This document shows positions 15,848-41,271 of a DNA stretch of 54,019 nt, piece by piece. Position 1 is the first letter of the stretch. Each line of letters starts with the position of its first letter. The DNA is from Octopus bimaculoides (taxonomy: Eukaryota), in assembly GCF_001194135.2 (NCBI RefSeq), contig NC_069006.1, forward strand, positions 4,414,259 to 4,468,277. The letters are read 5' to 3'. The position numbers and the translations under genes were made by a program. A model generated the notes under the pieces. It was not told the origin of the DNA and did not search any database. It saw only the letters and a program-made list of their open reading frames with translations.

Positions 15848-15953
15848 ATGGCCACTAGTACGTCATCAGTCTCCACTGACGCGACCAAAGATAAAAGTGC
15901 TAAAATACTCCATGGAATCCTTTCAAAACCATCGAAGGTGGTTTCTGTCTCGG
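15848..15953 (+). CDS. PRDM2: First visible coding exon of the PRDM2-like zinc-finger gene (MATSTSSVSTDATKDKSAKILHGILSKPSKVVSVS)
   Basis: The ATG sits in a strong Kozak context (gcggccATGG). Acceptor tttttgcag| precedes 15802, there is an in-frame upstream TAG at 15812-15814, and the donor is cgg|gtaatt after 15953. The exon ends in phase 1 (G), which matches the phase-1 entry of the 25447 exon (G+AT = Asp). The symbol rests on the downstream fingers. Confidence 0.7.
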
Positions 15954-16022
15954 GTAATTATTCTTCGCTTTTATTCACTGTATTTTCCTGCATACAATTC
16001 AACGTAGCACATAGCATTAAAC

Positions 16023-16276
16023 CAGTTTTAAAACTGTGGTCCGTGGACAGCAAATACTTTTTATGGACAATTTGGTTTTATATATGTTTTTTAATCGAAA
16101 TCTTTTAATTGACAATAAACCTATTTGTTAAATACTGTTAAATAAATAAATGTAAAAATATATGTTATTTTAAGGAAATATTTATGTATAAATTTCATAA
16201 GCATTTATAAGGGGGTCCCTAAGGTAAAGCCTGAAATATAAAGGGGTCCGCAAGTCAAAAAGTTTGAAAATCCCTG
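16023..16276. mobile_element. Old hAT-like MITE
   Basis: Left end cagttttaaaactgtggtccgtggac and right end aaaagtttgaaaatccctg. The flanks gcattaaac / gcataaac resemble a decayed 8-bp TSD. Confidence 0.5.
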
Positions 16277-16374
16277 GCATAAACATATAAACATCATCAC
16301 TATCATCCCTAATACTTTTGTATTTTACAATCAGTTTTTGCTCCTCCAATGTTGTTTTCTTAAATAAGTTCAGT

Positions 16375-16670
16375 GAAGGCGCATTGGCTTACTGTTTAGG
16401 GTTTTCAGCTTGCAATTGTAAGGTCAGGAGTTCAATTCTCGGCAACGCATTGTGTCCTTGAGCAAGACTCTTTCACATTGTTCCAGTCCACTTACTTGGC
16501 AAAAAAGGAGTTGTGCCTGTAATTCAAAGGGCCATCCTTGTCACATTCTGTGTTATGCTGAATCTCCTTGAAAACTACATTAAGGGTACACATGTCTGTG
16601 AAATGCTTGACCACTTACATGTTAATTTCACAAGCAGGCTGTTTCATTGATTGGATCGACCGGAACCAAC
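16375..16670 (+). mobile_element. tRNA-derived SINE, family C (ggagttcaattc..gtgtccttgagcaag)
   Basis: Box-B-like GGAGTTCAATTC. A less diverged inverted copy lies at about 47200-47530, and related heads at about 13245-13410 and 21335-21520. Confidence 0.7.
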
Positions 16671-17053
16671 AGAGTGCTACTTATATGAGCTGACCTACCA
16701 TGTTTTACTGTCGATTTTGGTTTGAGAAATTTGATTTGTATGCCAGAAAATGCTGTATCCTATTTATTACACTCTCTTTTTCTATCCATCTGCTGCTCCT
16801 CATAAGCATTTAAAAAACCCCACCTACACTCCTTTTACTTGCCTCATATCTTGAGGGAGGGCCACCTGGACACTCATCACCACTATTTGTATCTATTTCT
16901 TTCCAACTCCAAATAGTTATTCTCTCCCTATCTTCCGAATGTGAGAGGACATGTAGTTCCTCTACAATAAGGACCTTTTCTCCCTCTCCATTTAACCCTT
17001 TAGTATTCAGTTCTACATTTGACGGATATTTGTCCTCATCTTGTTTTGTTGCT

Positions 17054-17099
17054 AACACAACGTTTCAGCTGATATACCCTCCAGTCTTCATCTGGTGTC
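17054..17099 (-). ncRNA. Minimal type-I hammerhead-like motif in the left inverted repeat
   Basis: gacac-CAGATGA-a-gactg-gagggtatat-cagct-GAAA-CG-TT-gtgtt. Helix I is gacac/gtgtt and helix III is the palindrome AACGTT. The core carries a U4->A change (CAGAUGA). Confidence 0.6.
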
Positions 17100-17786
17100 T
17101 TGGGGACATTTCGCACCTGGGTTCTCATTCCTAAGGTATTTTTCGATATTGTTATTATTATTCAGGTCACTGCCTGGAATTGAACTCTTAACCACTACGC
17201 CATATGCCCATGGGCAATTATGGAGTGGATTTTAGGGCTTATAAATCTAATATTCGACTACCCTTATTTTGAGTGGGGGGGGCATATTTCGCCTTTGTAT
17301 AAACCTACAAATATCTCCTTCAAGTAAAACCACCAATAGAAGATAATATGACCAAAGACTGTGTGTACTCCATCCCATGCAGCTGTGGTAGGTTATACAC
17401 AAGCAAAACATGCACCCCCCTCCTCAAAATAAGGGTAGACGAACATCGCAAAGCTGTGACACGAGGAGATATTGATAAATTGGGTATAGCTGATCATGTA
17501 TGGAAAAATGGAGACCACCTCCCCCTGTGGGATGAAGTTAAAATAATAGACAGAGAACACCACTGGAAAATACGAAAACTAACAGAAGCAGCACATATGC
17601 TAGGAGACAACAACCTCCTAAGCAGACCGAGTGCAGATATGAATAGCATATGGGAACCGGTATTAAGGAAGGATAAGAGAATATTAGATTCCGTGTTCGA
17701 TTCCAGGCAGTGACCTTAATAATAATAATGATAATAAAATCGAAAAATACCTTAGGAATAAGAACCCAGGTGCGAAATTTCCCCAA

Positions 17787-17827
17787 GACACCAGATGAAA
17801 GCTGGAGGGTATATCAGCTGAAATGTA
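17787..17827 (+). ncRNA. Second, more decayed hammerhead-like copy in the right inverted repeat
   Basis: gacac-CAGATGA-a-agctg-gagggtatat-cagct-GAAA-tgta. Helix II is a perfect 5 bp, but the 3' strands of helices I and III are disrupted. Confidence 0.5.
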
Positions 17828-18697
17828 TTAACAACAAACAAGATGAGGACAAATATCTGTCAAATGTAAATAATTATTTTATAGCTTCGAGATTTCAATG
17901 ACATAACCACTTATCTTTAGAATGACATTGTAGGGTTGGTGTGAGAGGCCAGATCTGACCAGTTTGAACATAGAACAGGTAGAATATTTGGGCTTCATAT
18001 GACCAGTTTAAATACTAAAGCATTAAGCTCTCATCCCCTTGAATAAAGCTGACCCCCCTCCTCCATCAGGGTTTGTCGTCTTCCAAGCTGTATAGCAACC
18101 TCACTTTTGTGATACAAAAGAAGCACCTAGTACAAGCTGTAAAGTGGTTGGTATTTGGGAGGACATCCCCCCACTGTAGAAACCATACTGAAGCAGTCAC
18201 TCAAGCACAGTGCTGTCCTCGGAACTAATGGATCATGTCAAACCATCGAACCCCTGCCAGGATGGAACGTTGGCATTTACTGAGAAGGCTGATGATATTT
18301 TATATATTAACTCAGCTTGCTCTTTTCATTTTGCTTCTCATCCTCTCTTCACCACACAACCCCATCACTTTTCACTTTCTTTCATTTTCCTTTTAATAGG
18401 CACAGCAGTTAAAACGTTTGCTTCCCAACCACATGGCTTCGGGTTCAGTCCTTGGTAAATGTCTTCTACTATAGCCTCAGGTTGACCAGAGCCTTGTGAG
18501 GTGATCTGGTAAATGAAAACTGTAAGAAGCCTGTTATGTAAATTTGTGTGGGTTTTGACATCGCATCATAGCTGTAAGTGAGCGTCACATCTTGCAGGTT
18601 ATGTCATTCACTTCCAAATTCTGTGTAAGCATACCTGGCCATAGGGAAATATTATTTAACCTATGCTGTAGGTACATAAACAGGGCAAATTTAGCTA

Positions 18698-19667
18698 CGA
18701 GATGGTATCAAAAAGTTCCCGGACTAGTTATATTTAATAAAAAATAAACTTATTTCCCTAAGTGTTAACATCATCTCCTTCGAAATAGTCACCTTGCACA
18801 GAAATACACTAGTCACAGCATTCCTACCACTTTTGGAATCTGGCCTGGAAGTTGTTTTCCGTAAGCAGGTCTAGGACCTTCTGTGATTTGCTCTGGATCT
18901 CAATATCATCATCATCATTTAACGTCCACTGTCCATGCTGGCATGGGTTGGACGATTTGACTGGGGACTGGCGAAGCGGATGGCTACATCAGACTCCAAT
19001 CTGACCTGGCAGAGTTTCTACAGCTGGATGCCCTTCCTAATGCCAACCAGTCCGAGAGTGTAGTGGGTGCTTTTTACGTACCACCGGCATGAGGGCCAGT
19101 CCGCTGGTACTAGCAATGGCCATGCTCAAATGGTGTTTTTTACATGCCACCTGCACAGGAGTCAGCCAATGTTTTGTTCACATGCCACCGGCACAAGTGC
19201 CAGTAAGGCGAAGCTGGAAACGATTGCACTCAAATGATGCTTTTTACGTGCCACCGGCACGGGAGCGAGACCGCTGCTCTGGCAATGGTGTTAAAATGGC
19301 AACGTTTGAGCTGCATTTTCATCTTGGGGAAGAGGCGGAAGTCTGCAAGGGCCAAATCTGGTGAATAGTGTGGGTGCTGAAGTGATATCGTGTTGTTTTT
19401 GGTGAGAAACTCATGAGTGAGTACACCTCAGTGGCAGGGTGCATTGTTGTCATGGTGAATCTAATTCTTAGCATTCCACAGATCTGGTCCCTTTTGCTGA
19501 ATCTTCTTCCTCAAATGCTTCAAAATGTCATAGTAGAACTCTCAGTTGAGTGTCTGCTCCTGGGGGACAAATTCCTGATGCACAATGCTACATTTCCTGG
19601 GAAGACACTCATGACAAGTCTTCCAGATTGTTCATCATCTTCCAGGGATGTTTTCCTCCTTTTGAAG
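18698..19667 (-). mobile_element. Decayed mariner transposase interrupted by a retro-insertion at 18905-19282
   Basis: Minus strand reads IVHQEFVPQEQTLN..HHDNNAPCH..HPHYSPDLALADFRLFPKMKMQLK, then EIQSKSQ..FQKW..CISVQGDYFEGD. Terminal TA|CGAG at 18696. CAAT is duplicated at both sides of the insertion. Confidence 0.88.
18905..19282 (-). mobile_element. RTE-LINE 3'-UTR-type non-autonomous repeat with (GAT)n tail
   Basis: Same body (ggaagggcatccagctgtagaaac...ccaacccatgc..aaacgatgatgat) as the copy at 45870-46240 and many others (560-720, 1200-1450, 1760-1960, 23490-23760, 27900-28200, 43860-44060). Confidence 0.8.
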
Positions 19668-21789
19668 TAAGTTCTGAATTAAAATCTTCCACCAAACCTT
19701 AGTCACAATTTATGTTCCTAACACTAGCTTAATGATAACTAAGTTATTTTACTAAATTCTGTTACATTTAAAATTAATTGAAAGAAACACAGAGCATCTC
19801 AAGATAAATACAATAACGAAAGGGTTAAAATATATAATAGAGAAACAATTCTTAACCATTTCGATACCAAACCGGCTGAAACCACCTCTGGCTCTGTCAT
19901 ACAAATGTCTTGTTTTCATAAGTTTTGAATTAAAATCTTCCACTAAACCTTAGTCACAATTTAGGTTCTTAACACTAGCTTAATGATAACTAAGATTTTT
20001 TTTTTTTATTTTGACATAGTAAGCATATGAATGCTTGACTATAAAATTAAAGATAAAACTTCATACTGTCTCATGTGAAAATCATTGTTGAAACCGAAAA
20101 CTTCTTTTAACTTCCATTACTATTTTGCATTTAAAATTATTTCAAGGGCATCATGCATTCATGGGGGAAAAAATTAATCTAACAGTGAATCATATGATTT
20201 TCATAGATTTATAAAGGAGTTACAAAGTGGGTATAATAACCTCTTGGATTTCATGAACTTTTAAGTGAATCCCTTAGCCTTATATTGTCTTTACTGTATT
20301 ATGGTTACAATAGACAATCGTTTGCACACTCAGGTAAACTTTGTCTCACTGTGTGATATTGCTTGATAACAACTGGGAATATGTCGTCACAACTGCAAAT
20401 GTCACCTTATTACCTCCCTTGACTATAACTTTCCGCCATGTTTGTTACTTAAAACTGTTCAAAAATTTGTTTTACTCTGTGTCTTTCTTACATCTTACAC
20501 AAATCTGACACGACAGGAATTATATCTACTTGTGTGTGACCCATTGTCTTATGGTAGATTAAAATAAATATTAGTTTTTAGCTATTTTTAGTTCTTACAT
20601 TAAATACAACAAACCACAGACATGAAATTTTGACACTGTTTGTGTATACAGACATTGTTTAATGAATTTTAACATTTTCATTATTGGAATGCCTGTGAGA
20701 TTCTCTTGCATAAGTTCTTCATTCATTACAAACTTTTCAGTAATAACAGTTAATTTTTGAATGGCTGTAAGAAAATAATCATTCAAGTATTTTCTTCTGA
20801 AATAATTGAATAAAGAAAACTAAAGTGGACAGTGTCTGAAAGTTGTCTAGGTTACTTGTGTATTGGGTGAGAGATTGATGTGAAAACAACGATAGATAGA
20901 TAGATAGATAGATGACTTTTCTTATTATAAAAAAAGTAACTTATTACAATTTAACAGAGCAAAAGGAATATTTATTCATGAGTTTTCTTAAGAGTAACAA
21001 GCTTACTTTTAAAAGAAGAAATTTTCTGTTATCGAAAGTGATAGCCTATGGACTGTGTGGAGAACTATACGTGCATGTGTTTCTGTACATTTATAGAGAG
21101 GTCAGGGGAAGTGCATTGGGTGAGAGTTCAAGGTAAAAAACAGTTACAATATTACCACTGCATCTCTGCTTATCTTTATGAAATTACACATCCTTTGGAG
21201 GAAAGTGTATGGACAGTACAAATGAGGCAGTACAAACAGATTCTAAAAATTATAATGCTGATCGATCTTCAACATCATTGACATTATAACTTATGTCTTT
21301 TATTTATATTTTATTATGGTGGCTGTTATTGTGGAGGGACATGGCTTAGTGGTTAGGGTATTGAGCTCATGATTGTAAGATTGTGGTTTCAATTCCTGGA
21401 CTAGGCAATGCATTGTGTTCTTGAACAAAACACTTCATTTTACATTGCTCCAGTCCTCTCAACTGGCTAAAATAAGTAATCCTGCAACAGACTGGAATCC
21501 TGTCCAGATGGGGGATGTATATGCCACAGAAACTGAGAAGCCTATGAGTCTATACAACTCCGGAAGTTTTTGTTTTTTTTTATTGTTTAGCTCATGGTCA
21601 GTTCTGATTGAGCAGTCCTATTGTCAACAGCTTTCAAACCGGCTTCTTTTAAGGCATAGTATATGTAGGATTATATTATACAATGTGTCTTCCGTTCCTT
21701 ATGAAGGTACTGTCTGGTTTGTAAGAAACTTACTTATTTCTACAAGGTCGAGGGACTGCATAGTGATTCCCTCTGGACCACTGCCATCA

Positions 21790-22005
21790 TTATCTTCACA
21801 TCCACTTTTCCTTGACAATGATGCTGCTCTGCCAGTCTTTGAGTTTGACACTTTCCTGAACTAACCTGTACTTTTCTCCACCGGAGACTTTAAATATCTC
21901 AGCAACTATTCTTCATGGATCAAGTGCCTTTTCTCTCCTCGTATCCTTAATCCCTCCATCTACCACACTGCTGTCGACTTGAATGGCTGGTCCTTCTATT
22001 GGGTC
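21790..22005 (-). mobile_element. RTE LINE ORF2 fragment
   Basis: EGPAIQVDSSVVDGGIKD..IVAEIFKVSG, homologous to the region near 12700-12800. Confidence 0.6.
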
Positions 22006-23286
22006 TACATGAACTACTCCCCCCCCCCTCAGACATTCTCCACATTCTAGACCCTCTTGTAATAACACATCCATGCCTCATTCTTACTAGTATCAGTAAG
22101 AGCAAGTGCTGTTTTACTTGTTTCACTCATTGGACTCTGGTACCACCTGCTAAGTTACAGGAGCATAAGCAAACCCATAACAGTTGTCAAGCAGTAGTGG
22201 TAGAGACACACACGCACGCATATATATGGTAGGTTTCCATACAGTTTCCATCTACCAAATACATTCACAAGGCATTGGCCAACCCAGGGCTATAGTAGAA
22301 AACAGTTTCCCTTAGTGCTATACAGTGGGACTGAACCTGAAACCACGTGGTTGGAATGCAAACTTCTTGACCACACAGCTATGCTGGCATCTTTCATTAG
22401 ATTCATTAAATTACTGGATCTGATTCAAATGAATGCATATTTCTATCACAAAAATTTACTTTGAATTTAAAAAGGACCTTATTTAAATTAATATTCATTT
22501 TAGCCATCTGTGTATCATATCGGATGTATATACATGTTTGATAGGCTACTTAATGCAACGTTTGTCCTGAGATAACATCTGTTATGGATGTACTTTGTTA
22601 AAAACACAAATATCAGAGGGAGATGAAAATTCACTCCAGCAGAAGCCAGCAAATGTGCCAGGTGCATTTTGGCCTTTTTGGATACTTTAAATGGCATATA
22701 CTCACAGCCAGCTTCATGGTTGAACTAGAATTTGTTGTTTCTAATATTGGAACAATTGAATAAAACATTCATTCACTGATGTTGCAAACTGCTACTAGCT
22801 GAATGAAAATCCAGTATATGCAATTGGGGCAGAATTTGATTAAAATGGCCATCTGTGTATCATATCTAATGTATACACAGTCGACGGGCCAGTTACTGCA
22901 GTATTTGTCCTGCGACATCTCTTACAGACTTGCCATGTTGCTCGGATGAATCTTTTGTTTCTCTCTCTGATATTTGTTGTGTTTTAACACAGTGAGTGCA
23001 TAAGAGATTTTATCCTTGGGTTTATTGGATCCTGTCAGGCTGTCCAACCCATGCCAGCATGGAAGACTGACATTAAATGAGGATGATGAGATGATGATGA
23101 TATATACGTACATACATATATATATTTATATATACACACACTCACCATCCTCGCATACACACACGCACATGCAAATCCTAGTTCAGCCAGGTCACTGTTA
23201 TTATCTCCCTTCCGCTCTACCTCTTTCTTTTGGTCATTTCATCATGTTGAATTGTTAATCGCTACACATTTTTTTACCTCTCAGAC

Positions 23287-23322
23287 CTTTCTGTCGAAGA
23301 GCAAAGGCTCAAAACATCAAAG
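23287..23322 (+). ncRNA. Decayed hammerhead-like motif in a third Penelope-type repeat
   Basis: cttt-CTGTCGA-a-GAGC-aaag-GCTC-aAAACATC-aaag. Helices I and II pair, while the core and cleavage site differ from CTGACGA/GAAACGTC by three substitutions. Confidence 0.45.
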
Positions 23323-23429
23323 ACTTTTCCATTCTTCTCAAGCTTTAAAGTGATACACCTGCTTGTTGTTCCCTCACCTGTCTTCATCTTTTGTTTTCTG
23401 TAAATTTGACCTATATATGTCTATCAACC

Positions 23430-23477
<48 letters not shown>

Positions 23478-24235
23478 GTTACATTACAAGCATAGGGTTA
23501 CGGTTAGGGTAACGTGGTTGGCGTCTGGAAGGGCAGCCAGCTGTAAAAATCATGCCGAAACTAACCTTGTCTGTGCTAGCGCCACGTAAAAAGCACTGAG
23601 TCCACTCTGCAGAGTGGTTAGTGTTAGGGAGGGGCATCCAGCCATAAAATCTCTGCCAAAACAGACACAGTGGCCTAGGGTTGATTTTCTACCTGGCCAG
23701 CTTCTGTCAACCGTCCTACCCATGCATACATGGAAGATGGATGTTAAACGATGATGATGAATGCTGTATATGCAATTGAGGCAATATTAAATTAAAATAA
23801 CTATCTATATATCATACTCAATGTATACACACTGTTGAAAGACCAATTACTGCACTTATGGACATGCAGTGTTAAAAACACAATAAGATAGGGATATGAA
23901 AAGTCACACAAACAATTGCCAGCAAGAACACCAGATGCATTTTCGCTCTTTTGAGCCATTCCAATTGCTCATACTTGCAGCCAGTCACATGTCTGGATGA
24001 AAATTCATCGCCTCTGATTTTACTTTTCATCCATTTTTCAATCTAGAATTCTCCTGGAAATGACTGCATCCTTCTTTTAGAAAAATTAGTTTTGAACTTT
24101 AATGAAAAAGAATGTTATTTAATGACTTTAAACCGACCATATCTGGCCCAAATATTCTACTTGTTTTATGTTCAAACTGACCAGATCTGGCTGCTCAAAC
24201 CTACCCTACAATGTCATTCTAAAAATAAACAATCA

Positions 24236-24610
24236 CAGGAGTGGCTGTGTGGAAAGTAGCTTGCTTCCCAACCACATGGTTCCAGGTTCAGTCCCACTGC
24301 ATGGAACCTTGGGCAAATGTCTTCTACTATAGCCATGGGCCAACCAAAGCCTTGTGAGTGAATTTGGTAGATGGAAATTGAAAGAAGCCCATCGTATATG
24401 TATATGTTTGTCTCCCACCACCACCACCATCACTTGACAACTGATGTTAGTGCATTTACATTCCCGTAACTTAGCGGTTCGGCAAAAGAAACTGATAGAA
24501 TAAGTACTAGGCTTCCAAAGAATATGTCCTGGGATCGATTTGCTCGACTAAAGGCGGTGCTCCAGCATGACCACAGTCAAATGACTGAAACAAGTAAAAG
24601 AATAAAAGAA
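24236..24610 (+). mobile_element. Full-length SINE, family A
   Basis: Head, middle and tail are colinear with the reverse complement of 1973-2380. Confidence 0.88.
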
Positions 24611-24612
24611 TA

Positions 24613-24849
24613 TTGGGTTGGTGCATAATTATTGCAGCTTTTATTCACCAAAAGCAATAGCAGCATTTAATAAAAACATCTTTAAATGATTATCCCGGAG
24701 CATATTCACCATCTACTTCAATTACTGTTTCCCATTTGCTTGGCAGACGGTCAGACCGTCATTTAAAGATGTTTTTGTTAAATATTATTATTGCTTTTGT
24801 TGGATAAAATTTATTGCAAAAAATCCACAATAATTATGCACCAACCCAA
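24613..24849 (-). mobile_element. Mariner-derived fold-back MITE with TA TSDs
   Basis: Perfect 22-bp terminal IR ttgggttggtgcataattattg with TA on both sides. The core encodes the transposase C-terminus RLPSKWETVIEVDGEYAPG* on the minus strand. Confidence 0.9.
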
Positions 24850-25446
24850 TATAAAACATTTAATAAACTATGCTGTATGTTATACTTGCATAATGAAATA
24901 TGGTGTGCTTACAAATCATTAGTATGACCATATGACTACTCCACCAACTGTAGCGCCTATGGCTCCTGTTAAGGCTCAGCTTGTGTGTGAAATATGTTTG
25001 ATAAGTCAAATTGGTATATCCAATAATGGTATATCCAATAATAGTCGAAAGCTCTGCATACCGGAAGCCAGCAAGTGTCTCCTGATGACCCCATACACTT
25101 GCTGGCTTCTGGTATGCGGAGATTTCGACTGGTAACACTTGCATGTGCAAGTTGTTTGCAAAACGTTGAAGTGGCTGTTTAAGTAATGAGTTCATGGATG
25201 GTTAATGAGTTGGATGGATGCTGATGAAGGATGCTGAAGAATTTGTGCAATATGGCATATACACCAATTACCCATTTTTCATCTTTGATCTCATTATTGC
25301 TTACATTAGGGGTACATGGATACAAAATGTTGTAATAAAATCAATGCTGGTTACAATTTCTATCGAAATCTGTAGAGACAAGTCTAACAAGTGAATGTTA
25401 TTTAACTTTATATTTATTTTACTTTTTTACTTTTACTTCAATCTAG

Positions 25447-26295: not shown

Positions 26296-26360
26296 GTAAG
26301 TTTTATTCATTTGTTCATTTGTGTGTGTGTGAGAGGGAGAGAGTGTATGTGTGTGTGTAT

Positions 26361-29365: not shown

Positions 29366-29399
<34 letters not shown>

Positions 29400-30460: not shown

Positions 30461-30568
30461 TATGCACACACACACACGGACACACACATTCACTCTTATA
30501 TAATTTTTATGTATATTATTTTTTTCCCTATTTTTTAAATTATTTTTTCTCTCTCTTCCTAATTTCAG

Positions 30569-31051: not shown

Positions 31052-31087
<36 letters not shown>

Positions 31088-34000
31088 ATAGTAGTAGCAG
31101 TAATGGTAGTAGTTCTGGTCACAGTAGTAAATCAGCGTCTGTCCAATCTACATCTAGAACCACTACGAAAGCAGAACCGGAATCGGTAGATGATCTCCAG
31201 TGTAAAATCTGTGGCAAAGTTTTCTCTTGCTCATCATTCCTCATGAAACACATTGTATGTATGCACAACGGTGCTATGAAGCGCAAAGCAAATCAGAACC
31301 GAAAAGCAGCGAACAATCAAAAAGAATCTACTTCACAAACCATAAAACAAGAGCCTGGAACGGAAAGCCAGGTTAACCCTTCCAAAGAAAATATAACTGT
31401 AAAACCCTCGAAGCAGACCTCAAAAAAGAAGTGTAAATTCAAATACATCTGTACTGTTTGTAAACGCAAGTTCAGGTCATATGTCCAGATGTGCAAACAT
31501 AGACGTTCTGCTCATTCTAAGGTTAATGTCAGTGATAACAATCCTGCGTATTACGACATAGAACAAACTGATTTTGAAAATGAGTTGCTTCCAGGTGACT
31601 TTGAGGCTCCGTACCTTGAACCAAAGGATGTCGCCGAAAACGTCGCGCGGAATCTTTGTTGTTATATCGATGGTCGTGTCGATTCCTTCTCTGATTTTAG
31701 TAAATATGTAAAAGTCAAAGATTACACATCTTTGTTAGAACATGATCCAGAATATTTAAAACAAGAGTCTGATGCTATTTGGTCTGAATATAATTTCCCT
31801 TCCTCTTTCAAGACTGAAAATGAAATTTGCATATGTACAAAAAGTGAAGAATCGCCTTCTCTAAAGCATTTAAATTCTCAGGAATGTTCTCCAAAAACCT
31901 CAGTGAAAAATCAGAACGAATCAAGTTGTCAGTTGGATTCTCATTCTTCAAATGATCCGGAGGTTGATTCAAAACTGATGGACGATAGCTCACCCTGTGA
32001 TCAACAAACATTGACTTTAGCTACTCCTACCACATCAATACCTGTTACAAATGTCGTTAAGAATCACTTCTTGTCCCATTGTGGCCTTGATCTTGTGGAT
32101 AATGCACCTAGTTTGCATCCAGCAAATGAGGGGACAGCAAATACTGAGAATATCTGTGATAATTCTATCTACCCTCCTCTTTCTTCAGCCTCAGTTCCAT
32201 GTCTTGATTCTAGTTGTAAGCCAGCAGTTTGTTCAGGATTTCTAGCAACAAGTGATGCTTCCCTGAACCCGAAACCAGTAATTACTACATCTGTTCCCAC
32301 ATTGAGTCCTCCCACGTTTTCTTATTCTTCTGCACAACCAGAACCATCACTTTCAAAAGAAGATACAGAAAAACAAACCATTTCACCAGGAGACTCTTCT
32401 AATGATGGCAGCAATAATAACTATGCTAGTGTACAAGAAACACAAGAGTTTGTTTCAGATTCGGTTCCAAAACAGGTTCAATTTCAAAGTGCCTCTGTAG
32501 TACATAAGTATCCTACATGTCCCAAAACATTGTGCCATACTGCTTCCTCAAAGCAAGATGTTACAAATCCAGACTCATTGAAAACATGTGGTGCAAATTG
32601 TAATGAAATCTATGCAACTGTTGTGCCAAAAGTTGAGGGTCCTTGTCTTCAGTCAACCTCAAAGAACGATGACAAGAAGCCAAATGGATTACAACAGCAA
32701 TCTTGTTTGCATAATTGCAGCCAGTCTTCCACCCTGCTTAAGAATTCTGAAGTGGGTAAGGTTTCCACAGTGACGCCAACCTTTGACAGTGAATCAACCA
32801 AAGTTAACCGAGTCCTTAAATGTGGCCAGAAAGATGTCCTTTTTAGTGGACCACACATGATGACTGCCCACATTCACGAGAGAGGTCATTTGGTTTTGGA
32901 GTTTGGTAACGAAAATGAAATATCATCAAAAATTAAAAACAGTTCCAATGTCCGTCATGAAGAGCCACAGAAAGCATTTTCTTTGAAATCTTCGAGTTCT
33001 GTTAAAAAATCCAAAAAGAACCAAAATCTTTTAGATTTCAGTATCCAGCATATTGTTAAGAGTCGTGTTGAAGATTATAAGAAGTTTATGTTAGAAAATC
33101 ATATGTGGCCTATTGAAGTTAGCAGTGCCAGCCAAGTAGAAAATGGTGAAAACAAAGATTCTAACTTTATTAATTATCCCCAATATGACATTCCTACTAG
33201 ATTAGAGAAAGTAATTGACAAAAACTACAGTGATTCCGAAAAAATTTCCACCTTTATTAAAAGTGGTCTTCTGCCTTGTGAAAACTTGAAGGACTTAGAG
33301 AATTGTTTCCGTGGCGCCTGCTTTCAGAGCTGGAACTGTGAAGTACTCGATTACGATAAGATTGCTTTTGGTAAGCAAGGAATTGTTAATTTGATCTGTT
33401 CAGTGTGCCACAAACATTTTTTAGATTTGGATTCTTTGCTGCGACACCAACTGCATCGGCATCCCAGTATTGAGTGCAACTTTCTGGAAGTAGAACTTGG
33501 CCAGAGCATAGTCGCCTTGCACTACCCAACTCCTACCATCAAAGGCGTCCTTTGTTCTCCAAATATTGACCTTAGTGCCTCCAAAACCTTAGAGACCTAC
33601 AAATGCTCCAAATGTCGAAATCTGTTTCCGACTGTCTCTCGTCTCCATTCGCATATAATACGATGTGCTTCTAATCTGGACAATATGCTTACTACCAGTA
33701 ATTCTAAAATGGGCAAAAGGAAGTACAAGAAGCGCTTAAAGAAACGGCTCCGCGATGTGTTGAATGGTTCCAATACTTTTAAATTCCGATTGAAAGACTT
33801 TGCTGGATATGATCCGACTATTTTCCGAGAAAATCATACAACCCGAAGGAAGTTGGCCGACTGCGAGAACAGTAAGGTCACTTATATTGATGATGACCAT
33901 GACAAAAACCGTAAACGTCGTGGCCATGACTTGTCTTATGATCCTAAAAATCATGTTAGGCGAAGAGAATCAGTTGAGGTAATTGAAACACATCAGTGCC

Positions 34001-37000
34001 GGGGTTGTAGCATAAAGTTCAAGTCTCTGCCCTCACTTGAGAGACATGCCCCCAATTGTTCACATAAGGACAAACTTCAAAACCTCAAAGTACTCGAAGG
34101 TACTGCCCCTACACCACCAGTAAAATCAAAACCCCAACATAGATGTCACTACTGCAGCAAGCAGTTCACTTATCCTAAAAGCCTTTGTAATCATTATGTA
34201 AATTTATGTTCAGCTCGGAACCAACAAGAGAAATCTGGGACTCTTTCTGTGGAGGATCTTCAGAAAGAAGCAGCCGTTGCAAGATTGGTACAGCAAGAGG
34301 AAAAAGAGAAAGTGTCAGAGGTTCAAATTCCTGCTGAGAATAAGCCAGATGAAACAGAACAAAGCCCTAATTGTAAAGGTGTGAAAAGGAAATTGTCCAA
34401 GAATAATTTTTCTTGGACTTCAATAAAGAAGAAAAAGAATGAAAACTCCGAAAAGGCAAGTAGTGATGTTGAAAATGAAGATGAGGAGGAAGAAGAAGAA
34501 GATGAAGAAGAAGAAGAAGAAGAAGAAGAAGAGGAGGAGTTGGAGGAAGGAGAGGATGCCCTTGAATATGATAATGATGATGCTTCAGAAGAGAAGGAGG
34601 ATTGGTTGGCATTTAAGGGTGAAGTCAAAGAGGAGACTCAATCTTCATTGCATCATGACGATGAGGTTCCTGAAGGCAATGTTTGCAGAACGAAAGCTAA
34701 GTCTTCTGATGCTTGCCTAGAAGAACTCTTAGTAGAGAAGAAACCGTTGTTACATTCAAAAACCGTTGAAGAAAGTTCACAAAATGCTCTCAGCAAACAA
34801 TTGCGGAATTCAAATGTTGTAGAGAAACCATGCAATGTTACAAACAGTGAAATAAAATTGTCAACAAATAACATAGCCTGTAAAACTGAGACGTCTTATG
34901 AGCACCAAGGTGCTTACAAGAATATCTTGGAATCCGAACTGTATAAACAACTGACTAAACAAACTATGTTTGTCAGTGCTGCAGACAGTTCAAATGCAAA
35001 CGTTAAGCAGGAACCGAGGGACGTGGAATTAGCAGAAGCTTCAGTGACCGACGCCCAACCTTCTGTGTTTGAAGACCAATTGAATGAAGAGACTTCAAAA
35101 TCAGAAACTCAACTTGATGATGGAATCAATAGTCAGGCTTCAACAGTTGATATTGCAATTGAAAGATCAGAAGTTGTTCAAGAAATCCAAACAAGTGCAA
35201 TTTGTGATCAGGAAGAGGTGAAACCGAATTCTTTAGTGGTGCAGCTACCTGTTGAAATAGCTAATAAAACATCAGAAGATGGCCAAGATGTAAAATTACC
35301 AGAAAATGACACAGGAGACACAGACAATCAGCATCATTCTCTGCCTGAAGAATCTCCAGAAGAAGCAGACAAGGAATTCGGTGATGAAAGCAGCAGAGCT
35401 ACACAGTGTCATGTTAGTGATTCACTTCCCAAAGACACGTCAGCTGAAGTACCACAAATAACATCAGAAAGTCCTCTTACAGATGATGCTGGTACTTCCG
35501 ATGCATCTTATGTTTTAATGCCAAGCGAGTTTCTTTCTGGACAGCCCACGGTTAGAAATAATGGAGAAACAGTATCTTTATCTGGCAGCACCAATGTTGT
35601 AGCAGCAGAAAGAAATACAAGCAGTGTAAACGCCGAGGCTGAAGGTACCAAAGAAGCGGCAGATGTTCCTCTCTTACAGTTCTGTACTGATGGTTCTACA
35701 GTGGTTTTGTGGCCGGTTGGGATGGGAGGACTACCAAGCGGATTTAAGCCAGTTGTTGATAGAACATTAGGTATGACCATCCCTGAACTTCAGTTGAACC
35801 TCACAAACAGCAGTGACTCGGTTAGTTCAACATCAGTTTGTGAGAAAACAGCTACTGACAACAGTGTCTCTTCTGATATTGAGCCACTGCCCAAAGAAGT
35901 AGAAAGTCCAGCTACAGCAAATGAGTCTAATCTAAGTTTGGTTATTGATGACGGGGCTAAAATGCAGGACAGTGGTACAGAGAGACCGAGTGAAACAGTT
36001 AAATACCTTCTGACTCACCCAGCAGGACAAGATGCAGAAGGTTGTCAATCTCCATCTGCGGACAAGTTTGTACCACATGATGCTGATTTGTCAAAAGTAC
36101 AAATTGTGAGAGAGCCTGTCGAGAAGCACATCATGCGCAGCATTTTAAACAAGCCGCCTTTGGCAGCCCCTACTGCTACGTGGGATATGCTGGGAAATTC
36201 AACTTCGGCAGGACCCGTTATTAATTCTTCGTTAATTCCACTTCCTTCAGATAACTCTGCAGAAAGTACGTCTACTTCATGTGAATGTAACCCTGTTTTA
36301 AATCAGTCATTTCCTACAAATGTCGAAGTGAGTTGTGGATCTGAAAACATCAGCTTAAAAACATCTCAATTGATCTCTGATACAACTGTTGACACAACTA
36401 CAAATTATAAACCGAAGGAGAGTTCATCTTACTGTGACAGTGAGACACCCTTACTGGAAGCTACGTTGATACCTAAGTTGGAAACAGACAGCTTTGTTAC
36501 GGTGAATTCTACCTCTAAAGAACTTGATTCCACGACTTCTACAAAAACGCAATGTACTGGGTGTGATGTGAAACATGATAAGGCCATTTCATGTCCAACT
36601 GCAGGTTCCTGCTCAGTGAGCAACACATTCATTTCATCTGCTGAGGATTCTCATAGCAATGTTTTAAATGATCATCAAGAACCAGTGTCTGTGACAACAT
36701 CTGAATCATTGGAAAATGTTTCTCAACATGATTCCGAAACAGAGACAGATGGTCCTTCATGTGAAGTGACATCTTTGTCAGCTGATGTAACTGGTTCAGA
36801 GACTGAGACACTTTCTGCAAATGACTGTAGCTTGAACACTTCAACAAGCAACAATTCTACTGAGGAGTGCATTGTGGAAAAAAGCAGCATTTTTGAAGAA
36901 ATTACTGACAGCAACAAAACTGTGATGATTGAAGAAAGTTTGTCTGGTACAGAGATCTCTGTGTTGAATGAACCAATAGTAGCTATCTCTGAAAACCAAG

Positions 37001-40000
37001 TGCAAGAGGATGGCCCACGTGTCACCTACACAGACAACATAACAGAAGAACCTGTGACCCAAGAAACAGTCAGTGAACACTCGCAAGTAGATGTTTGTAG
37101 CCTTAATGTTGTTTATACACCTTTACCTGAGTTCTGTGAAGTAAATGTGACTCTGGTACCAGCAGTGTCGTATGATATGGGTGAGACTGAACCAAGTATT
37201 GTATCAGTAGTTGAAGAAGATGTACCTATAAACGAGACAGTGACAACAACTGTGTCGATGATGAGAGATGAATCTAAAAGCGAGATGGTGGAAGCTGTGT
37301 CTTTGCCAGTGGTGGGCAATGAGTCTGAAGTTGAAACACTAGAAGTTGTAGATGGTCAGTCTGGAAATGGAGTGGTGGACAGTGAACTTGACCAGACAAT
37401 AGAAACTTCTTCAACAGTGGACAGTGAGCCTGAAAGTGAGACACTGGACACTGCATCACTTGTCGACAGTAATTTTGAAAATGAGACAGAGCATGCTGCA
37501 GAAGTAAGGGACAGTATGTCTGATAATGAAATGGTGGAAACCACCTCAGCAGGAGATGACGAACCTGAAAATGAGGCAGTTGTGACTGCTTCAATAATAG
37601 ACTTGAAAGCTGAATGTGAGACAGAAGAGGTGTCTGTTGAAGTTAGCTGCCCTGTGAATGAAATAATGTCACCAGTTGATGCAGAAATAGAGAATGTCCC
37701 TATAAATGAGACAGTGGAGATTCTATCAGTTGGAGACAACTTGTATGGAAACGAAACAATGTCGACAACAGGCAGTGAATTTGAACATGAAACGACAGCA
37801 CAAGCTGTGCTGGTAGACTTGTCTGAAAATGAAACACCAGTTGAGGCTGAATCGGCAGCAAACATCATCTGTGACAGTGGAATGGTAACTAACGTGTCTA
37901 CAGCAATGCACAGTATTGCAATTGAGGGTCAGGTAACAGTACCAGGTTTGTCAATTTTGAGTGACACCCTTGAAAATGAGGTAGCTGTGGTTGAAGTGGC
38001 TGTGGGCCATGAGGGTGAAGAAGAAACATCTGTGGGTGTATCTATGAAAAGCCCTGAATCTACAGCTGAAACAAAGCTGGTTACACCAGGAATGAGCAGC
38101 ACATGGGAAGATGTGGTGCAGATGACAGAGTCAGTATCAAACAGCAGTATTTCAGCAACAGGTGATTTGCCTGAAAGCGAAACAGGTGTAAATGTGTTGG
38201 CAACAAACAACACATTGAGAAATGAGATGGCAGCAGTCGAGTGCGAAACAGATGAGGCATCTAAAAAAGAAACAGTACCTGAAATGACATCTGCAAGCGC
38301 TGCTGGTATTGCATTTGAAGATGATATATCTCAGTCAGGTATACCTGTCATTTGTTTAAGAGATGGGGTGAGTAACAAAGTGTCAACTGGTTATGTAGTA
38401 ATGGAGGAGAATTCATCACAGAGTAATTTTGTACCTGTTGTCACGGAAACAGATACATTATCTAATATTGTTGTGACTTTGTCTGATGTGAGCTGTGGAG
38501 GACCTCCACAAATGGAAACAGCAACACTGCCTGAAACATGCGTTACTCTACCAAATCCTAACCAAACGGTTTCGTTATTGGACAGTGCTGCTGCTCCTCA
38601 AATCATGACAATCATGGCAGAAACGGTAAGCAGTGTGTCCAGTCCTGGTGGAGATATGTCTGTAAGGGATACACACTTGCACCAAAAGGAAACCGCTGCG
38701 TTTGTAATGACCAAAGAAGCAGCAGGTACATCACTCATTCCTGCATGTAGTGCACCGAAAGACAAAACAACAGTACTTCATGTAGTGAGCAGTGGTGATA
38801 TACATGGAGTAGCTGAGTTCTCACCAGCTGAAACTGTAATATGTGATATACCTGGTAAGGAATCGACCCCAGTGTCAGTAATATATAGTGCTTCACTTGA
38901 AAAGAATTCTGCTCCTGTGGTATTTAGCAGCTGTTCTGGAAATGTAACACCAACCGTATCTACAGTGTACAGTACTGTACTCCTAAATGACGCAGCAACA
39001 AGTTTACCTGTGATGTGTGGCAGTGTATGTGGGGAAGTAATACCAACAGTACCTCTGGTGTGTAACATTGTATCTGAGAAAGAAGCAGCTGTTGTACCTA
39101 TGGTGTATAGCTCTCTGTGTGCAATGGAACCTGCAAACATATCTGTGATAGATAGCAACATGTCTGGGGAACAGGTGTCTGCTGTACCTGGGGGATGCAG
39201 TAAAGCACCTGCAATGTCAGCATCAGGGATGTATGGCAGCATACCTGGTGAAAAGACGGTGCTTGGTAGCGCAACCATACTTCCATCAGATAGCCATGTA
39301 GCTGAGACAGTATCGTCCTTGCCTGTTGAATGTAGTACTTTACCTGGGAATTTACTGCTCACACCTCAACCATCTGTTACATCTGGCGTTGTGTCGGGAA
39401 CAGCAACAGTTACAACTTTAACATGTAGCGGTGCACTGCCAAAGAAAACAGGACCTTTGTTACAGACATGTAGCACAATAGCGTCAGACAAATCTGCATC
39501 ACTAACATGTAACAGAGTCGTACAAAGTATAACGCCATTTATATCATCTACAGTTAGTAGTGGAGTACTCGGTACCGTACACATACCTCTGACATGTAAT
39601 GATGTTGTAGAAACATCAACATGTAGCAGTTCAATGGTGTCTGAAGTGATGGACTCCTCATCGCTCACATGTGGCGCAATAGAATCTGAGAAAAGACCAA
39701 CACCAAAAACTCTGAGAAACGATCGTATGACATCTGCATGTCTAACATGTTGCAGCAAAGTACCAGAAGAGGCAGCACATGTACCACTAACATGTAGTGA
39801 TGTAGTACTTGAGGATACAATGCTTACATCACAGACATGTGGCAATGCAATACCAGGGGAGACAGCAGCTACATTATTGGCATGTAGCAATGTAGTGCCA
39901 AAGGAGGTGGCACCTGCACCACAGACATGCAGCAGTGTAATACCAGAGAGGACAGTCCCTACATTATTAACAGGTAGCAATATAGTACAAGAGGAAACAG

Positions 40001-41271
40001 CACCTGCACAACTGACATGTAGCAGTGCAGTACCAGAGGACACAGCACCTACATTACTGGCATGTAGTGATGTAGTATCAGAGACAGTGTCTACACCACA
40101 AACATGTGGCACTGTAGTACCAGAGGAGACAGTACCTATAACACTGACATGTAGCAAAGCAACACCAGAGGAAACCAAGCCCCTGCATTTGACATGTGGC
40201 AATGTCCCAGGACTTGATATTTTAGCGCTATCAGTTACAAACAATTTTATTCCTGAGACTGAAAGCCCAGCTCCATTGGTTGAGGAGAGTATATCTTCCA
40301 AGGCTGATGCGGAATCAGAATCTCTTGTGCCCCCAAAGGTCAGCATCCCAATTGGGAACCCACATACCGAAAGCCTTATGTCTGTGCTATCAAAATGTTA
40401 CAATTCTGCTGCCAACACAAATAAGTCAAACCAACATTTGGACGAAGTAACAGCAAGATCTGAAAGAGTCTGCAACAAAGACCTTACCACGTGCATAGCT
40501 TCTTCAGAAAATAATTTTAGACTTCAAAATACATCAAAAAATTCTAGCTTTGATTATTTAACTCATTCTACTGTTACAGATAGTGGAAGTGCAAAATGCT
40601 GGAAATATGAAGTAAATGTACCTCAAGACATCCAGAATGATCCAAGAAATGAAACTGGAAATCAACAGCTCGGTGATCTTATTTCCTCATCTGCAAAACA
40701 TCTGGGTGATACAGAATCTGTGAAATCCCTTGGTGAGGATGTTCGGATCTTGATGGAGGAGCAAGACTCAGACTCCGACCCACTTGTAGTATTGTCTAGA
40801 GTTGCAGTAGCCAAAATCTCTGAGTCAGCAATGAAATCTGAAGAGAATCCGAAAAACGAGAGTGACTACACTGGAGTGACAACATTGAATTTTGAGAGTG
40901 AACTTGAGTTGGAAGTAGTTCCTGAGGCAATAATGGAAGGTGATATTCTGTACGAAGACTTCCCAGGTAGCTTTCCATTCCATACAGTCATCAGTCCTGA
41001 TACCAATGCAACATTAGAGACTCCACCTGACTGCCGTAAAATGATGCAGTATCTTTCCGACACATCAAGGACACTCAAACAATCATTACCTCCCCTGTCT
41101 CCACCTGCTCCACTCTTAAATCTCCCGCACAGGTACAAATCAGAAACGCCTGCTGCTCACTGTTTATCTTTTGATAACATTGAAGATTCAACACAAGCCA
41201 AACACATCAAAGTAACTGACTCTGTCCCTAAACCTGGTCTAAGCCTTAATCCTAGCCCTAACCCTAACTGA
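30569..41271 (+). CDS. PRDM2: Giant 10,703-nt coding exon: 7 zinc fingers (4 C2H2, 3 C2HC), low-complexity N/T/S tract, poly-Glu tract, long acidic repeat-derived C-terminus
   Basis: 3565-codon open frame with acceptor ttttctctctcttcctaatttcag|. Splicing from 26295 gives HSG-NLPF-QCEYC, a canonical finger linker. The fingers at 33379-33501, 33598-33672 and 34138-34209 resemble human PRDM2 fingers as recalled from memory. The 3' end (stop versus a donor near 41211) is uncertain. Confidence 0.92.
39745..40200 (+). repeat. Coding 45-bp (15-aa) minisatellite, about 10.2 units (TCS.VVPEET.P.LL)
   Basis: Units start with ACATGT/GCATGT every 45 bp from 39745. Unit 8 is 42 bp. Confidence 0.9.

What the first reader, a model, noticed from the sequence alone, without database searches (positions are those of the whole stretch)
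15848..41271. Giant PRDM2/RIZ-like zinc-finger gene with no visible PR/SET domain
Seen: a spliceable 3885-aa ORF with ten fingers. Recalled knowledge of human PRDM2, not a search: GIVNLICSVCHKHFLDLDSLLRHQLHRHPSIECNFLEVELG aligns with GVGNIFVCSVCKKEFAFLCNLQQHQRDLHPDKVCTHHEFESG, including the non-ligand C and E.E.G. LHSHIIRCAS aligns with LHKHILACAS, HRCHYCSKQFTYPKSLCNHYVNLC with HICPYCNREFTYIGSLNKHAAFSC, and KFTYKQNLIRH with KFTTKQGLERH. Human PRDM2 also keeps its fingers in one very large exon and has a PR-less isoform (RIZ2). Inference: this may be a constitutively PR-less invertebrate PRDM2 more than twice the human length. Caveat: an alternative acceptor at 15842|15843 is in phase 1, so upstream PR exons could exist outside the window or in a gap.
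Basis: partly seen in the sequence, partly recalled or inferred. Interest (0 to 1): 0.75.

Follow-up and report, generated by a model that had tools for sequence, protein, structure and literature searches.

The report
Octopod PRDM2 gene lacking PR domain
This is the octopus-lineage copy of the chromatin regulator gene PRDM2/RIZ, a 3885-residue zinc-finger protein whose three exons for the core of its methyltransferase-like PR domain are missing from the genome, so it is a natural case of an animal that appears to make only the PR-less ("RIZ2-like") form.

Summary
Exons 15848-15953, 25447-26295 and 30569-41271 (+) join through GT/AG sites into one 3885-aa reading frame with ten C2H2-like fingers. 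Both assembly gaps lie in intron 2 and do not touch coding sequence.

The gene is a PRDM2/RIZ orthologue. Its conserved finger blocks match, in the same order, large mollusc, sea-urchin and amphioxus proteins (amphioxus named PRDM2). Many of these carry an N-terminal PR domain. A profile comparison with vertebrate PRDM2 gives E 1.6e-17.

The PR domain is absent from the locus. In the cuttlefish Sepia pharaonis the same gene has coding exon 1, three PR-core exons, then the first finger exon. In this window and in Argonauta hians, exon 1 is kept: same start codon, same 5'UTR acceptor, same phase-1 donor. It is followed by a fully sequenced intron (9.5 kb and 2.4 kb) with no PR exon. Because both flanking introns are phase 1, the frame survives.

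The PR loss is specific to octopods, not general to invertebrates. The protein's length is ordinary for molluscs. The function proposed, a nuclear zinc-finger scaffold without methyltransferase activity, is inferred only.

The parts
15802..15847 (+). 5'UTR part of coding exon 1. It starts at a conserved acceptor (cag|ATGG), holds a short uORF at 15802-15819 (MEILV*), and has an in-frame TAG at 15812-15814 before the start codon.
   Evidence: Conservation with Argonauta begins exactly at this acceptor, and the reading frame between acceptor and ATG is not conserved (46 vs 47 nt). Sepia has the same cag|ATGG...GCCATGG arrangement.
15848..15953 (+). It encodes MATSTSS...KILHGILSKPSKVVSVS, the retained N-terminal strand of the former PR domain.
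   Evidence: Homologous to Sepia exon 1 (103 nt, phase 1) and Argonauta exon 1 (112 nt, phase 1). Shuffle test p=0.0006. Omega about 0.19.
15954..25446 (+). Intron 1, 9.5 kb with no N. This is where the three PR-core exons sit in Sepia, and none is present here.
   Evidence: tblastn and a PR-domain HMM on the six-frame translation find nothing above noise. The same HMM finds the core exon in the cuttlefish-like locus L002 at E 8e-21.
25447..26295 (+). Coding exon 2 (called exon B here): basic and serine-rich linker plus fingers 1-3 (25854-25919, 26112-26174, 26229-26291).
   Evidence: The finger-1 block FSLKRHFLRNHINVKYLSEADISNCMIN is conserved in Haliotis and in chelicerates at E about 1e-33 to 1e-43. 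80.5% nucleotide identity to Argonauta; omega 0.02.
26296..30568 (+). Intron 2, holding both assembly gaps (28741-29020 and 29812-30124) and transposon-like debris.
   Evidence: The orthologous introns are about 0.6 kb in Argonauta and Sepia.
30569..41271 (+). Giant last coding exon: 3566 codons plus the stop.
   Evidence: The corresponding frame in Argonauta is open for at least 4186 codons.
30586..31515 (+). Fingers 4, 5 and 6 (30586-30654, 31201-31266, 31450-31515), separated by a Ser/Thr/Asn-rich low-complexity tract.
31444..31809 (+). Conserved block 2: finger 6 plus the ...NLxxYIDGR...WSEYNFPSSF motif.
   Evidence: Aligns in the same order with Haliotis (E 1e-17), amphioxus PRDM2 and chelicerate relatives.
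33328..34293 (+). Conserved module of about 320 aa characteristic of PRDM2, with fingers 7-10 (33397-33462, 33604-33666, 33997-34065, 34144-34209).
   Evidence: 94 library hits at E<=1e-10 for the whole query, which spans this module. Consensus. hhalign against vertebrate PRDM2 gives E 1.6e-17. 81% amino-acid identity to Argonauta.
39759..40205 (+). 45-bp x10 coding tandem repeat (15-aa units of the type TCS..VPEET.P) within the lineage-specific C-terminal half.
40828..41109 (+). C-terminal motif conserved only among cephalopods.
   Evidence: Matches P0036 at E 4e-23 and Sepia locus L003 at 64% identity. No match outside cephalopods.

Best explanation
The locus is the octopod orthologue of PRDM2/RIZ.

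Shown: the ancestral cephalopod gene, as still seen in the cuttlefish Sepia pharaonis, is built from a non-coding leader exon, coding exon 1 (start codon plus the first PR strand, phase-1 donor), three exons for the PR core, a phase-1 acceptor into the first finger exon, and then a giant finger exon. In the lineage leading to Octopus-like octopods and Argonauta the three PR-core exons are gone. Because the introns on both sides are phase 1, exon 1 joins the finger exon in frame. The result is a 3885-aa protein that keeps every conserved zinc-finger block but has no SET/PR fold. The gene is under purifying selection.

Inferred: the protein acts like the human PR-minus isoform RIZ2, as a nuclear zinc-finger DNA-binding or scaffold factor with no histone-methyltransferase activity of its own. 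A PR-skipping splice form may have existed before the exons were lost. This is plausible because skipping exons 2-4 is frame-neutral and because the cuttlefish PR domain is already unusually divergent.
For: Gene model and fingers.

Family: the search of 1.84 billion representatives gives 146 hits. 31 of them have an N-terminal PR domain matching human PRDM2 PR (sequence verified against PDB 2qpw) at E 1e-14 to 1e-40. Named hits include PRDM2 of Branchiostoma lanceolatum, plus Haliotis, Solemya, Potamilus, Mactra and Diadema proteins.

Blocks in the same order as amphioxus PRDM2 and the Haliotis protein.

Vertebrate link: BLASTP gives three HSPs in the same order; hhalign gives probability 98.9% and E 1.6e-17.

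PR present in the decapodiform orthologue: the PR exon in L002; P0225/P0276 from Sepia pharaonis with Pfam PRDM2_PR at 78.8 bits; exon map of L003.

PR absent in octopods: Pfam, tblastn, and a six-frame HMM search with a positive control. The exon 1 to finger-exon interval is free of N in both species.

Exon 1 homology.

Selection: omega 0.19 and 0.02, and giant ORFs open in two species.
Against: - No transcript data were available, so splicing is inferred from consensus sites, conservation, and the deposited Argonauta and Sepia gene models.
- Only 15.8 kb (window) and 10 kb (Argonauta) upstream of exon 1 were visible. The window's upstream part has two small gaps (7550-7986 and 9777-9852).
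- Whole octopod genomes could not be scanned for a displaced PR exon or a PR-bearing paralogue.
- The PR domain alone does not separate PRDM2 from PRDM5, PRDM14 or MECOM. The PRDM2 assignment therefore rests on the finger blocks and on the amphioxus and echinoderm bridge.
- My PR profile A3 contained the human sequence, so searches are biased toward PRDM2.
- The exon 1 peptide homology is short: p=0.0006 for the window, only 0.05 for Argonauta.
- No [LI]xCxE Rb-binding motif is present, so the Rb-related part of RIZ biology cannot be transferred.
Confidence: 0.8

Rival explanations
1. PR-core exons still exist in octopods but lie outside the sequence seen, far upstream with their own start exon. 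They would splice into exon B while skipping exon A, so a PR-plus isoform is still made.
For: Cephalopod introns can be huge: Sepia introns 1-2 are 19 and 14.5 kb. Only 10-16 kb upstream was visible. A conserved acceptor at 15801|15802 shows that at least one further upstream exon exists.
Against: Exon A is the homologue of the exon that directly precedes the PR-core exons in Sepia, with the same start codon, 5'UTR acceptor and donor phase. The ancestral position of the PR exons is therefore intron 1, which is completely sequenced and empty in two species. All three frames of Argonauta exon A carry stops, so nothing can read through it.
Confidence: 0.07
2. Octopods carry two PRDM2 paralogues, and this is a PR-less duplicate while a PR-bearing copy sits elsewhere in the genome.
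For: Whole octopod genomes could not be searched. A synteny test with the Sepia locus found nothing either way.
Against: The library includes the deposited Argonauta hians protein set. The search returned only one Argonauta protein (P0037) and one cuttlefish-like protein among the close hits. The next hits are at bivalve or gastropod distance, 33-38% identity. The exon structure matches the single Sepia gene exon for exon.
Confidence: 0.07
3. The missing PR exons are an assembly artefact, a collapsed or deleted segment.
For: The window comes from a gap-rich assembly with seven N runs.
Against: Intron 1 contains no N. An independent, gap-free Argonauta contig of 18 Mb shows the same architecture with a 2.4-kb intron.
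Confidence: 0.02
4. The gene is not PRDM2 but an unrelated large C2H2 protein whose fingers resemble PRDM2 by chance.
For: Pairwise E-values to human are modest, 1e-3 to 2e-5. The first word-based search found nothing.
Against: Three to five blocks match in the same order. The profile comparison gives E 1.6e-17. Family members carry a PR domain and include named amphioxus PRDM2, to which human PRDM2 gives 220 bits.
Confidence: 0.02

Closest known systems
Human PRDM2 isoform RIZ2 (PR-minus; Q13029-3, lacks residues 1-201)
   Same: Lacks the PR domain while keeping all zinc fingers. It shares the ZF1-3-type block, the finger plus YIDG motif, and the C-terminal module of atypical fingers, in the same order. 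PMC4009873 describes RIZ1 and RIZ2.
   Different: RIZ2 arises from an internal promoter in a gene that also makes PR-plus RIZ1; here the PR exons are absent from the locus. The octopod protein is 3885 aa against 1517, has one extra C2HC finger (finger 9), lacks the two fingers that precede the GVGN finger in vertebrates, has no [LI]xCxE motif, and has a long lineage-specific C-terminal half.
Sepia (Acanthosepion) pharaonis PRDM2 orthologue (CAE1277981.1, locus L003) and the cuttlefish-like ENA contig L002
   Same: Same gene. About 51% identity over the 1041-residue query and 58-66% in the conserved blocks. Same exon 1, exon B and giant-exon structure, and same intron phases.
   Different: It has three additional exons that encode a PR core recognised by Pfam PRDM2_PR.
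Mollusc PRDM2 with a PR domain (e.g. Haliotis asinina XP_067658758.1, 3048 aa; Mulinia lateralis Ml-PRDM2, 1969 aa, 1 PR, 11 fingers, PMC10451705)
   Same: Very long proteins with the same three finger blocks. Size range 1690-3895 aa.
   Different: They have an N-terminal PR domain.
Chelicerate relatives without a PR domain (Centruroides sculpturatus XP_023226573.1 'zinc finger protein 850-like', Ixodes hexagonus CAN7986042.1)
   Same: All three conserved blocks in the same order and no PR/SET domain by phmmer or Pfam. They appear to be a second PR-less lineage.
   Different: Much shorter (1200-1400 aa). Their gene structure was not examined, and their N-termini rest on deposited annotation only.
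PR-minus products of other PRDM genes (EVI1 from MECOM/PRDM3, PRDI-BF1 beta, MEL1S)
   Same: The same PR-plus / PR-minus logic (PMC4009873).
   Different: Those are isoforms of genes that keep the PR exons, and they belong to different paralogues.

Membership tests
PRDM2/RIZ orthology group (by descent) | C-terminal module of atypical fingers (GxxNxxCSVC...HP..C..E.E.G; LHxHIxxC; FTYxxSLxxH....C) in the same order as in vertebrate PRDM2 | tested here: met
   BLASTP gives three HSPs in the same order against P0001 and P0013. hhalign gives E 5e-9 with the single sequence and E 1.6e-17, probability 98.9%, with the family profile.
PRDM2/RIZ orthology group (by descent) | The forward search of a universal protein library returns PRDM2-type proteins (PR domain plus the same finger blocks) as the relatives | tested here: met
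   146 hits, 31 with an N-terminal PR domain, and amphioxus PRDM2 named. Human PRDM2 gives 140-220 bits to the deuterostome members P0133, P0129, P0120 (Diadema), P0135, P0140, P0124 and P0171.
PRDM2/RIZ orthology group (by descent) | Strict reciprocal best hit against a complete vertebrate proteome, and a finger-region phylogeny against the other PRDM families | not testable with these tools
   No complete vertebrate proteome or PRDM paralogue set could be retrieved. The PR domain alone does not discriminate paralogues.
PRDM2/RIZ orthology group (by descent) | Shared exon and intron architecture with a PR-bearing cephalopod orthologue | tested here: met
   Exon 1 start codon, 5'UTR acceptor, phase-1 donor and the phase-1 acceptor of the finger exon are all conserved with Sepia.
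PRDM2/RIZ orthology group (by descent) | Conserved synteny with the cuttlefish locus | tested here: inconclusive
   tblastx of the downstream flanks found nothing. Only 8-13 kb was available.
PRDM protein family (by domain definition) | A PR (SET-related) domain in the protein | tested here: not met
   Pfam finds no PRDM2_PR or SET match in the model or in Argonauta P0037, while Sepia scores 78.8 bits and Haliotis 109.7 bits. No PR exon is found anywhere in the 54-kb window or the 26-kb Argonauta locus.
PRDM protein family (by domain definition) | An array of C2H2 zinc fingers | tested here: met
   Ten fingers by pattern, with Pfam zf-C2H2 and zf-C2H2_4 matches.
RIZ2-type PR-minus product | Generated by an internal promoter of a gene that also encodes a PR-plus product | tested here: not met
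   The locus has no PR exons. The PR-less protein starts at the ancestral start codon in exon 1.
RIZ2-type PR-minus product | Rb-binding LxCxE-type motif (IRCDE in human) | tested here: not met
   The model contains no [LI]xCxE.
RIZ2-type PR-minus product | Nuclear DNA-binding or co-regulator activity without H3K9 methyltransferase activity | not testable with these tools
   This needs biochemistry. Only the absence of the catalytic fold is shown.

The most novel reading that the evidence does not exclude
Loss of the PR domain from the genome, with the giant zinc-finger body retained under purifying selection, has happened repeatedly in PRDM2 orthologues, at least in octopods and in chelicerates. 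The conserved, indispensable function of PRDM2 would then be PR-independent. Surveys that define Prdm genes by their PR domain would have scored some such lineages (for example ecdysozoans) as having lost Prdm2 when only the PR exons were lost.
Probability: 0.45. Interest if true: 0.6.

Novelty: new variant of a known kind. Interest (0 to 1): 0.45.

Why it matters
PRDM proteins are defined by their PR domain, and the balance between PR-plus and PR-minus products (RIZ1/RIZ2, MDS1-EVI1/EVI1) is central to how they are thought to work in development and cancer. An animal lineage whose PRDM2 locus can encode only the PR-minus form, yet keeps a 3885-codon gene under purifying selection, is a natural separation-of-function experiment. 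It argues that the finger body has an essential role independent of methyltransferase activity.

It also gives a concrete route for domain loss: removal of phase-compatible exons. And it warns that PR-based gene-family censuses miss PR-less orthologues. No paper in the searched library links PRDM2 with cephalopods.

Tried and rejected
- Word-indexed homology search with the octopod module found nothing. That index seems to return only short proteins. The exhaustive representative search was what worked.
- A PDB search with the acidic region gave only noise and was wasted.
- PR-profile searches put vertebrate PRDM2 first. The profile contained the human sequence, so I do not count them as evidence of paralogue identity. 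Unbiased single-sequence queries (Sepia, Haliotis) do not separate PRDM2 from MECOM, PRDM5 or PRDM14.
- A search for a conserved upstream non-coding exon or promoter between the window and Argonauta found only dispersed repeats.
- The synteny test against the Sepia and L002 downstream flanks gave no hits.
- Exact look-up of the 3885-aa model and of two giant-exon products found none of them in the collection.
- Pfam on transposon-like intron ORFs gave no confident family, so their identity rests on my recollection only.
- The C-terminal 2100 residues have no relatives outside cephalopods.
Full report
**1. The observation**

The window is AT-rich eukaryotic DNA with seven N runs and abundant TA/CA microsatellites. 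On the + strand there is a 10.7-kb open frame at 30574-41271.

Joining 15848-15953, 25447-26295 and 30569-41271 gives 11658 nt, 3885 codons and a single terminal stop. The junctions are GT/AG and both introns are phase 1. Ten C2H2-like fingers fall at model residues 172, 258, 297, 325, 530, 613, 1262, 1331, 1462 and 1511 (coordinates re-translated).

**2. The gaps**

The program's warning about gaps was tested first. Both gaps (28741-29020 and 29812-30124) lie inside intron 2 (26296-30568). The finger 3 to finger 4 linker HSG|NLPFQC spans the junction with the canonical seven residues between His and Cys. The same peptide is contiguous in the Argonauta and Sepia proteins. The orthologous introns in those species are about 0.6 kb and gap-free. 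Nothing coding is hidden in the gaps.

**3. What family it belongs to**

A word-indexed search with the central finger region found nothing.

An exhaustive HMMER search of 1.84 billion representative proteins with model residues 520-1560 gave 146 hits. 49 of them were below 1e-30, and most were proteins of 1200-3900 aa matching a module of about 320 residues at model 1239-1560.

Using the human PRDM2 PR domain, whose sequence I verified against PDB 2qpw and 2jv0, 31 of these proteins have an N-terminal PR domain at E 1e-14 to 1e-40. Named members include:
- PRDM2 of Branchiostoma lanceolatum
- proteins of Haliotis asinina, Solemya velum, Potamilus streckersoni, Mactra antiquata, Sinanodonta woodiana and Diadema
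- a Plakobranchus protein of 3895 aa mislabelled PRDM14

The octopod protein matches amphioxus PRDM2 and the Haliotis protein in the same order, in three blocks:
- the fingers 1-4 block
- finger 6 plus a YIDG...YNFP motif
- the module

A profile of 50 invertebrate modules aligns with a profile of 18 vertebrate PRDM2 sequences at probability 98.9% and E 1.6e-17, across three fingers. Human PRDM2 gives 140-220 bits to the deuterostome invertebrate members. The published survey of Prdm genes already places Prdm2 in deuterostomes and lophotrochozoans (PMC4760075), and a bivalve PRDM2 of 1969 aa with 11 fingers is described (PMC10451705).

Caveat: the PR domain by itself does not discriminate PRDM2 from PRDM5, PRDM14 or MECOM. 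My PR profile included the human sequence, so searches are biased. The PRDM2 assignment therefore rests on the finger blocks and on the amphioxus and echinoderm bridge.

**4. Is the PR domain really missing?**

Pfam finds no SET or PRDM2_PR match in the model. tblastn with human and mollusc PR domains finds no exon in the window.

The closest relatives supplied the decisive comparison.

*Argonauta hians.* The protein GAB1602279.1 (P0037) starts with the same MAS..KILHGILSKP peptide. Its locus L001 has no N, an exon 1 to exon B intron of only 2.4 kb, and no PR exon within 10 kb upstream or in the gene.

*The cuttlefish-like relative.* P0036, on locus L002, is 51% identical to the octopod query and carries a PR-core exon at 4193-4351, upstream of its exon B. 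The spliced protein P0225 clusters with Sepia (Acanthosepion) pharaonis CAE1277981.1, which has Pfam PRDM2_PR at 78.8 bits.

*The Sepia locus L003*:

| Exon | Coordinates | Notes |
|---|---|---|
| Exon 1 | 10001-10103 | 103 nt, phase-1 donor |
| Exon 2 | about 29331-29428 | PR core |
| Exon 3 | 43998-44156 | PR core |
| Exon 4 | 47920-47995 | PR core, ends in phase 1 |
| Exon B | 48972-49886 | first finger exon |
| Giant exon | from 50542 | |

A PR HMM run on six-frame translations finds the core exon in L002 at E 8e-21. It finds nothing above noise in the window or in Argonauta.

**5. Exon A is the ancestral first coding exon**

The best match of the cuttlefish N-terminus in the whole window is exon A, in frame, with the two initiator Met residues aligned (alignment; shuffle test p=0.0006 for the window and 0.05 for Argonauta). 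Several DNA features agree across the three species:
- the start context GCCATGG (GTCATGG in Argonauta)
- a 5'UTR acceptor cag|ATGG about 45-60 nt upstream that opens a short uORF
- a phase-1 donor 103-112 nt after the ATG

Between the conserved acceptor (15801|15802) and the ATG, the main frame carries a stop in both octopods. The spacing differs by one base, as expected of untranslated sequence. All three frames of the Argonauta exon contain stops. Upstream coding exons therefore cannot read into this exon.

**6. Mechanism of the loss**

The ancestral position of the PR-core exons is intron 1. In this window intron 1 is 9.5 kb and contains no N. Exon 1 ends in phase 1 and exon B begins in phase 1, so removing or skipping exons 2-4 is frame-neutral. 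The octopod protein keeps about 35 residues that include the first PR strand (GILSKPSKV against GIILKQSQV) and then continues directly into the linker before finger 1.

The cuttlefish PR domain is itself the most divergent of 23 compared. It changes 6 of 27 invariant or near-invariant positions, against 0-3 for the others. This fits relaxed constraint before the loss, but that reading is an inference.

**7. Is the gene alive?**

The giant exon is open for 3566 codons here, and for at least 4186 codons in Argonauta up to the end of the fetched locus. Omega is about 0.19 for exon 1 and about 0.02 for the 3' part of exon B, where dS is saturated. The module is 81% identical at the protein level. 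The C-terminal 2100 residues are acidic and Ser/Thr/Val-rich, have relatives only in cephalopods, and contain a 15-aa x10 repeat.

**8. How it probably works**

Shown: a protein with all conserved PRDM2 finger blocks and no SET/PR fold.

Inferred from what is established for human RIZ1 and RIZ2 (PMC4009873): it acts as a nuclear zinc-finger DNA-binding or scaffold factor that cannot methylate histones itself. There is no [LI]xCxE motif, so Rb binding should not be assumed.

**9. Rivals**

- A distant PR-plus first-exon set that splices to exon B, skipping exon A.
- A PR-bearing paralogue elsewhere in the genome.
- An assembly artefact.
- Chance resemblance to PRDM2.

Each is addressed in the Rival explanations section. 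Together I give them about 0.2.

**10. Novelty and score**

PRDM2 in molluscs is known, and very long mollusc orthologues are ordinary. What is new is that the octopod locus has lost the exons for the domain that defines the family. I found no paper linking PRDM2 with cephalopods.

In passing, scorpion and tick proteins share all three blocks in the same order and also lack a PR domain. This suggests a second independent loss, and that PR-based surveys under-count PRDM2 orthologues.

I rate this a new variant of a known kind, interest 0.45.

Noticed in passing
P0102, P0131, P0125, P0127 (hits): Chelicerate proteins (Centruroides sculpturatus 'zinc finger protein 850-like', Ixodes hexagonus and two unnamed) share all three PRDM2 finger blocks in the same order with the octopod protein. 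They have no PR/SET domain and only about 65-85 residues before finger 1. The published survey scores Prdm2 as lost in ecdysozoans, so this may be PR loss rather than gene loss.
   Followed up: partly
window 15802-15819; L001 9954-9971; L003 about 9963-9989: A short uORF starts exactly at the conserved 5'UTR acceptor in all three cephalopods: MEILV*, MEVYV*, MALQFSEW*. It may be a conserved translational control element.
   Followed up: partly
window 24923-25000: Intron 1 holds a partial copy of the 3' part of exon B (YDHMTTPPTVAPMAPVKAQLVCEIC against HNHMTAPPTVAPMAPVKAQLACEIC), about 450 bp upstream of the real exon. It matches Argonauta exon B in blastn.
   Followed up: no
window 39759-40205: A 45-bp x10 (also 90-bp x3.9) tandem repeat inside the coding exon, giving 15-residue units of the type TCS..VPEET.P.
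   Followed up: no
window 30811-31113 and 34477-34532: Coding microsatellites: (AGT)x25 in a Ser/Thr/Asn tract and (GAA)x18.7 in an acidic tract. The Ser/Thr/Asn tract is much longer in Argonauta, about 170 extra residues.
   Followed up: no
L001 13848-26405: The deposited Argonauta hians model GAB1602279.1 stops at 1000 aa. The giant exon frame stays open for at least 4186 codons to the end of the fetched locus, so the annotation is truncated.
   Followed up: partly
L003 10001-57591: The deposited Sepia pharaonis model CAE1277981.1 (524 aa) skips most of exon B and of the giant exon. The neighbouring model (Aa_trans, 53172 onward) overlaps the giant exon. Both look like annotation errors at a 47-kb gene.
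   Followed up: partly
P0225 / P0276 residues 1-140: The cuttlefish PR domain changes 6 of 27 positions that are invariant or nearly so in 22 other PRDM2-type PR domains (for example G to R in FGPxxG, and W to Y in EELLTW). The other sequences change 0-3.
   Followed up: partly
window 33997-34065 (finger 9): The C2HC finger preceded by YDPKNHVRRRE is conserved in molluscs and in amphioxus PRDM2 but has no counterpart in vertebrate PRDM2. Conversely, the two canonical fingers that precede the GVGN finger in vertebrates and amphioxus are absent in the octopod.
   Followed up: partly
P0038, P0039, P0052, P0083 (one search hits): Bivalves (Potamilus, Solemya, Mactra, Sinanodonta) have PR-bearing orthologues, although the 2015 survey inferred loss of Prdm2 in bivalves. 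The Plakobranchus orthologue is labelled PRDM14 and the Mactra one 'histone-lysine N-methyltransferase'.
   Followed up: no
window 17303-17710, 26340-27002, 29637-29811: Intron ORF fragments that look to me like transposon remnants: a GIY-YIG/Penelope-like piece, a reverse-transcriptase tail with a PHD-like Cys motif, and a mariner-like transposase that runs into the gap at 29812. Pfam gave no confident match.
   Followed up: partly
window 597-650, 1187-1355, 1800-1960, 11693-11748, 18897-19057, 27589-27644 and others: A short dispersed repeat (SINE-like, about 50-170 bp) is shared in many copies between this window and the Argonauta locus.
   Followed up: no
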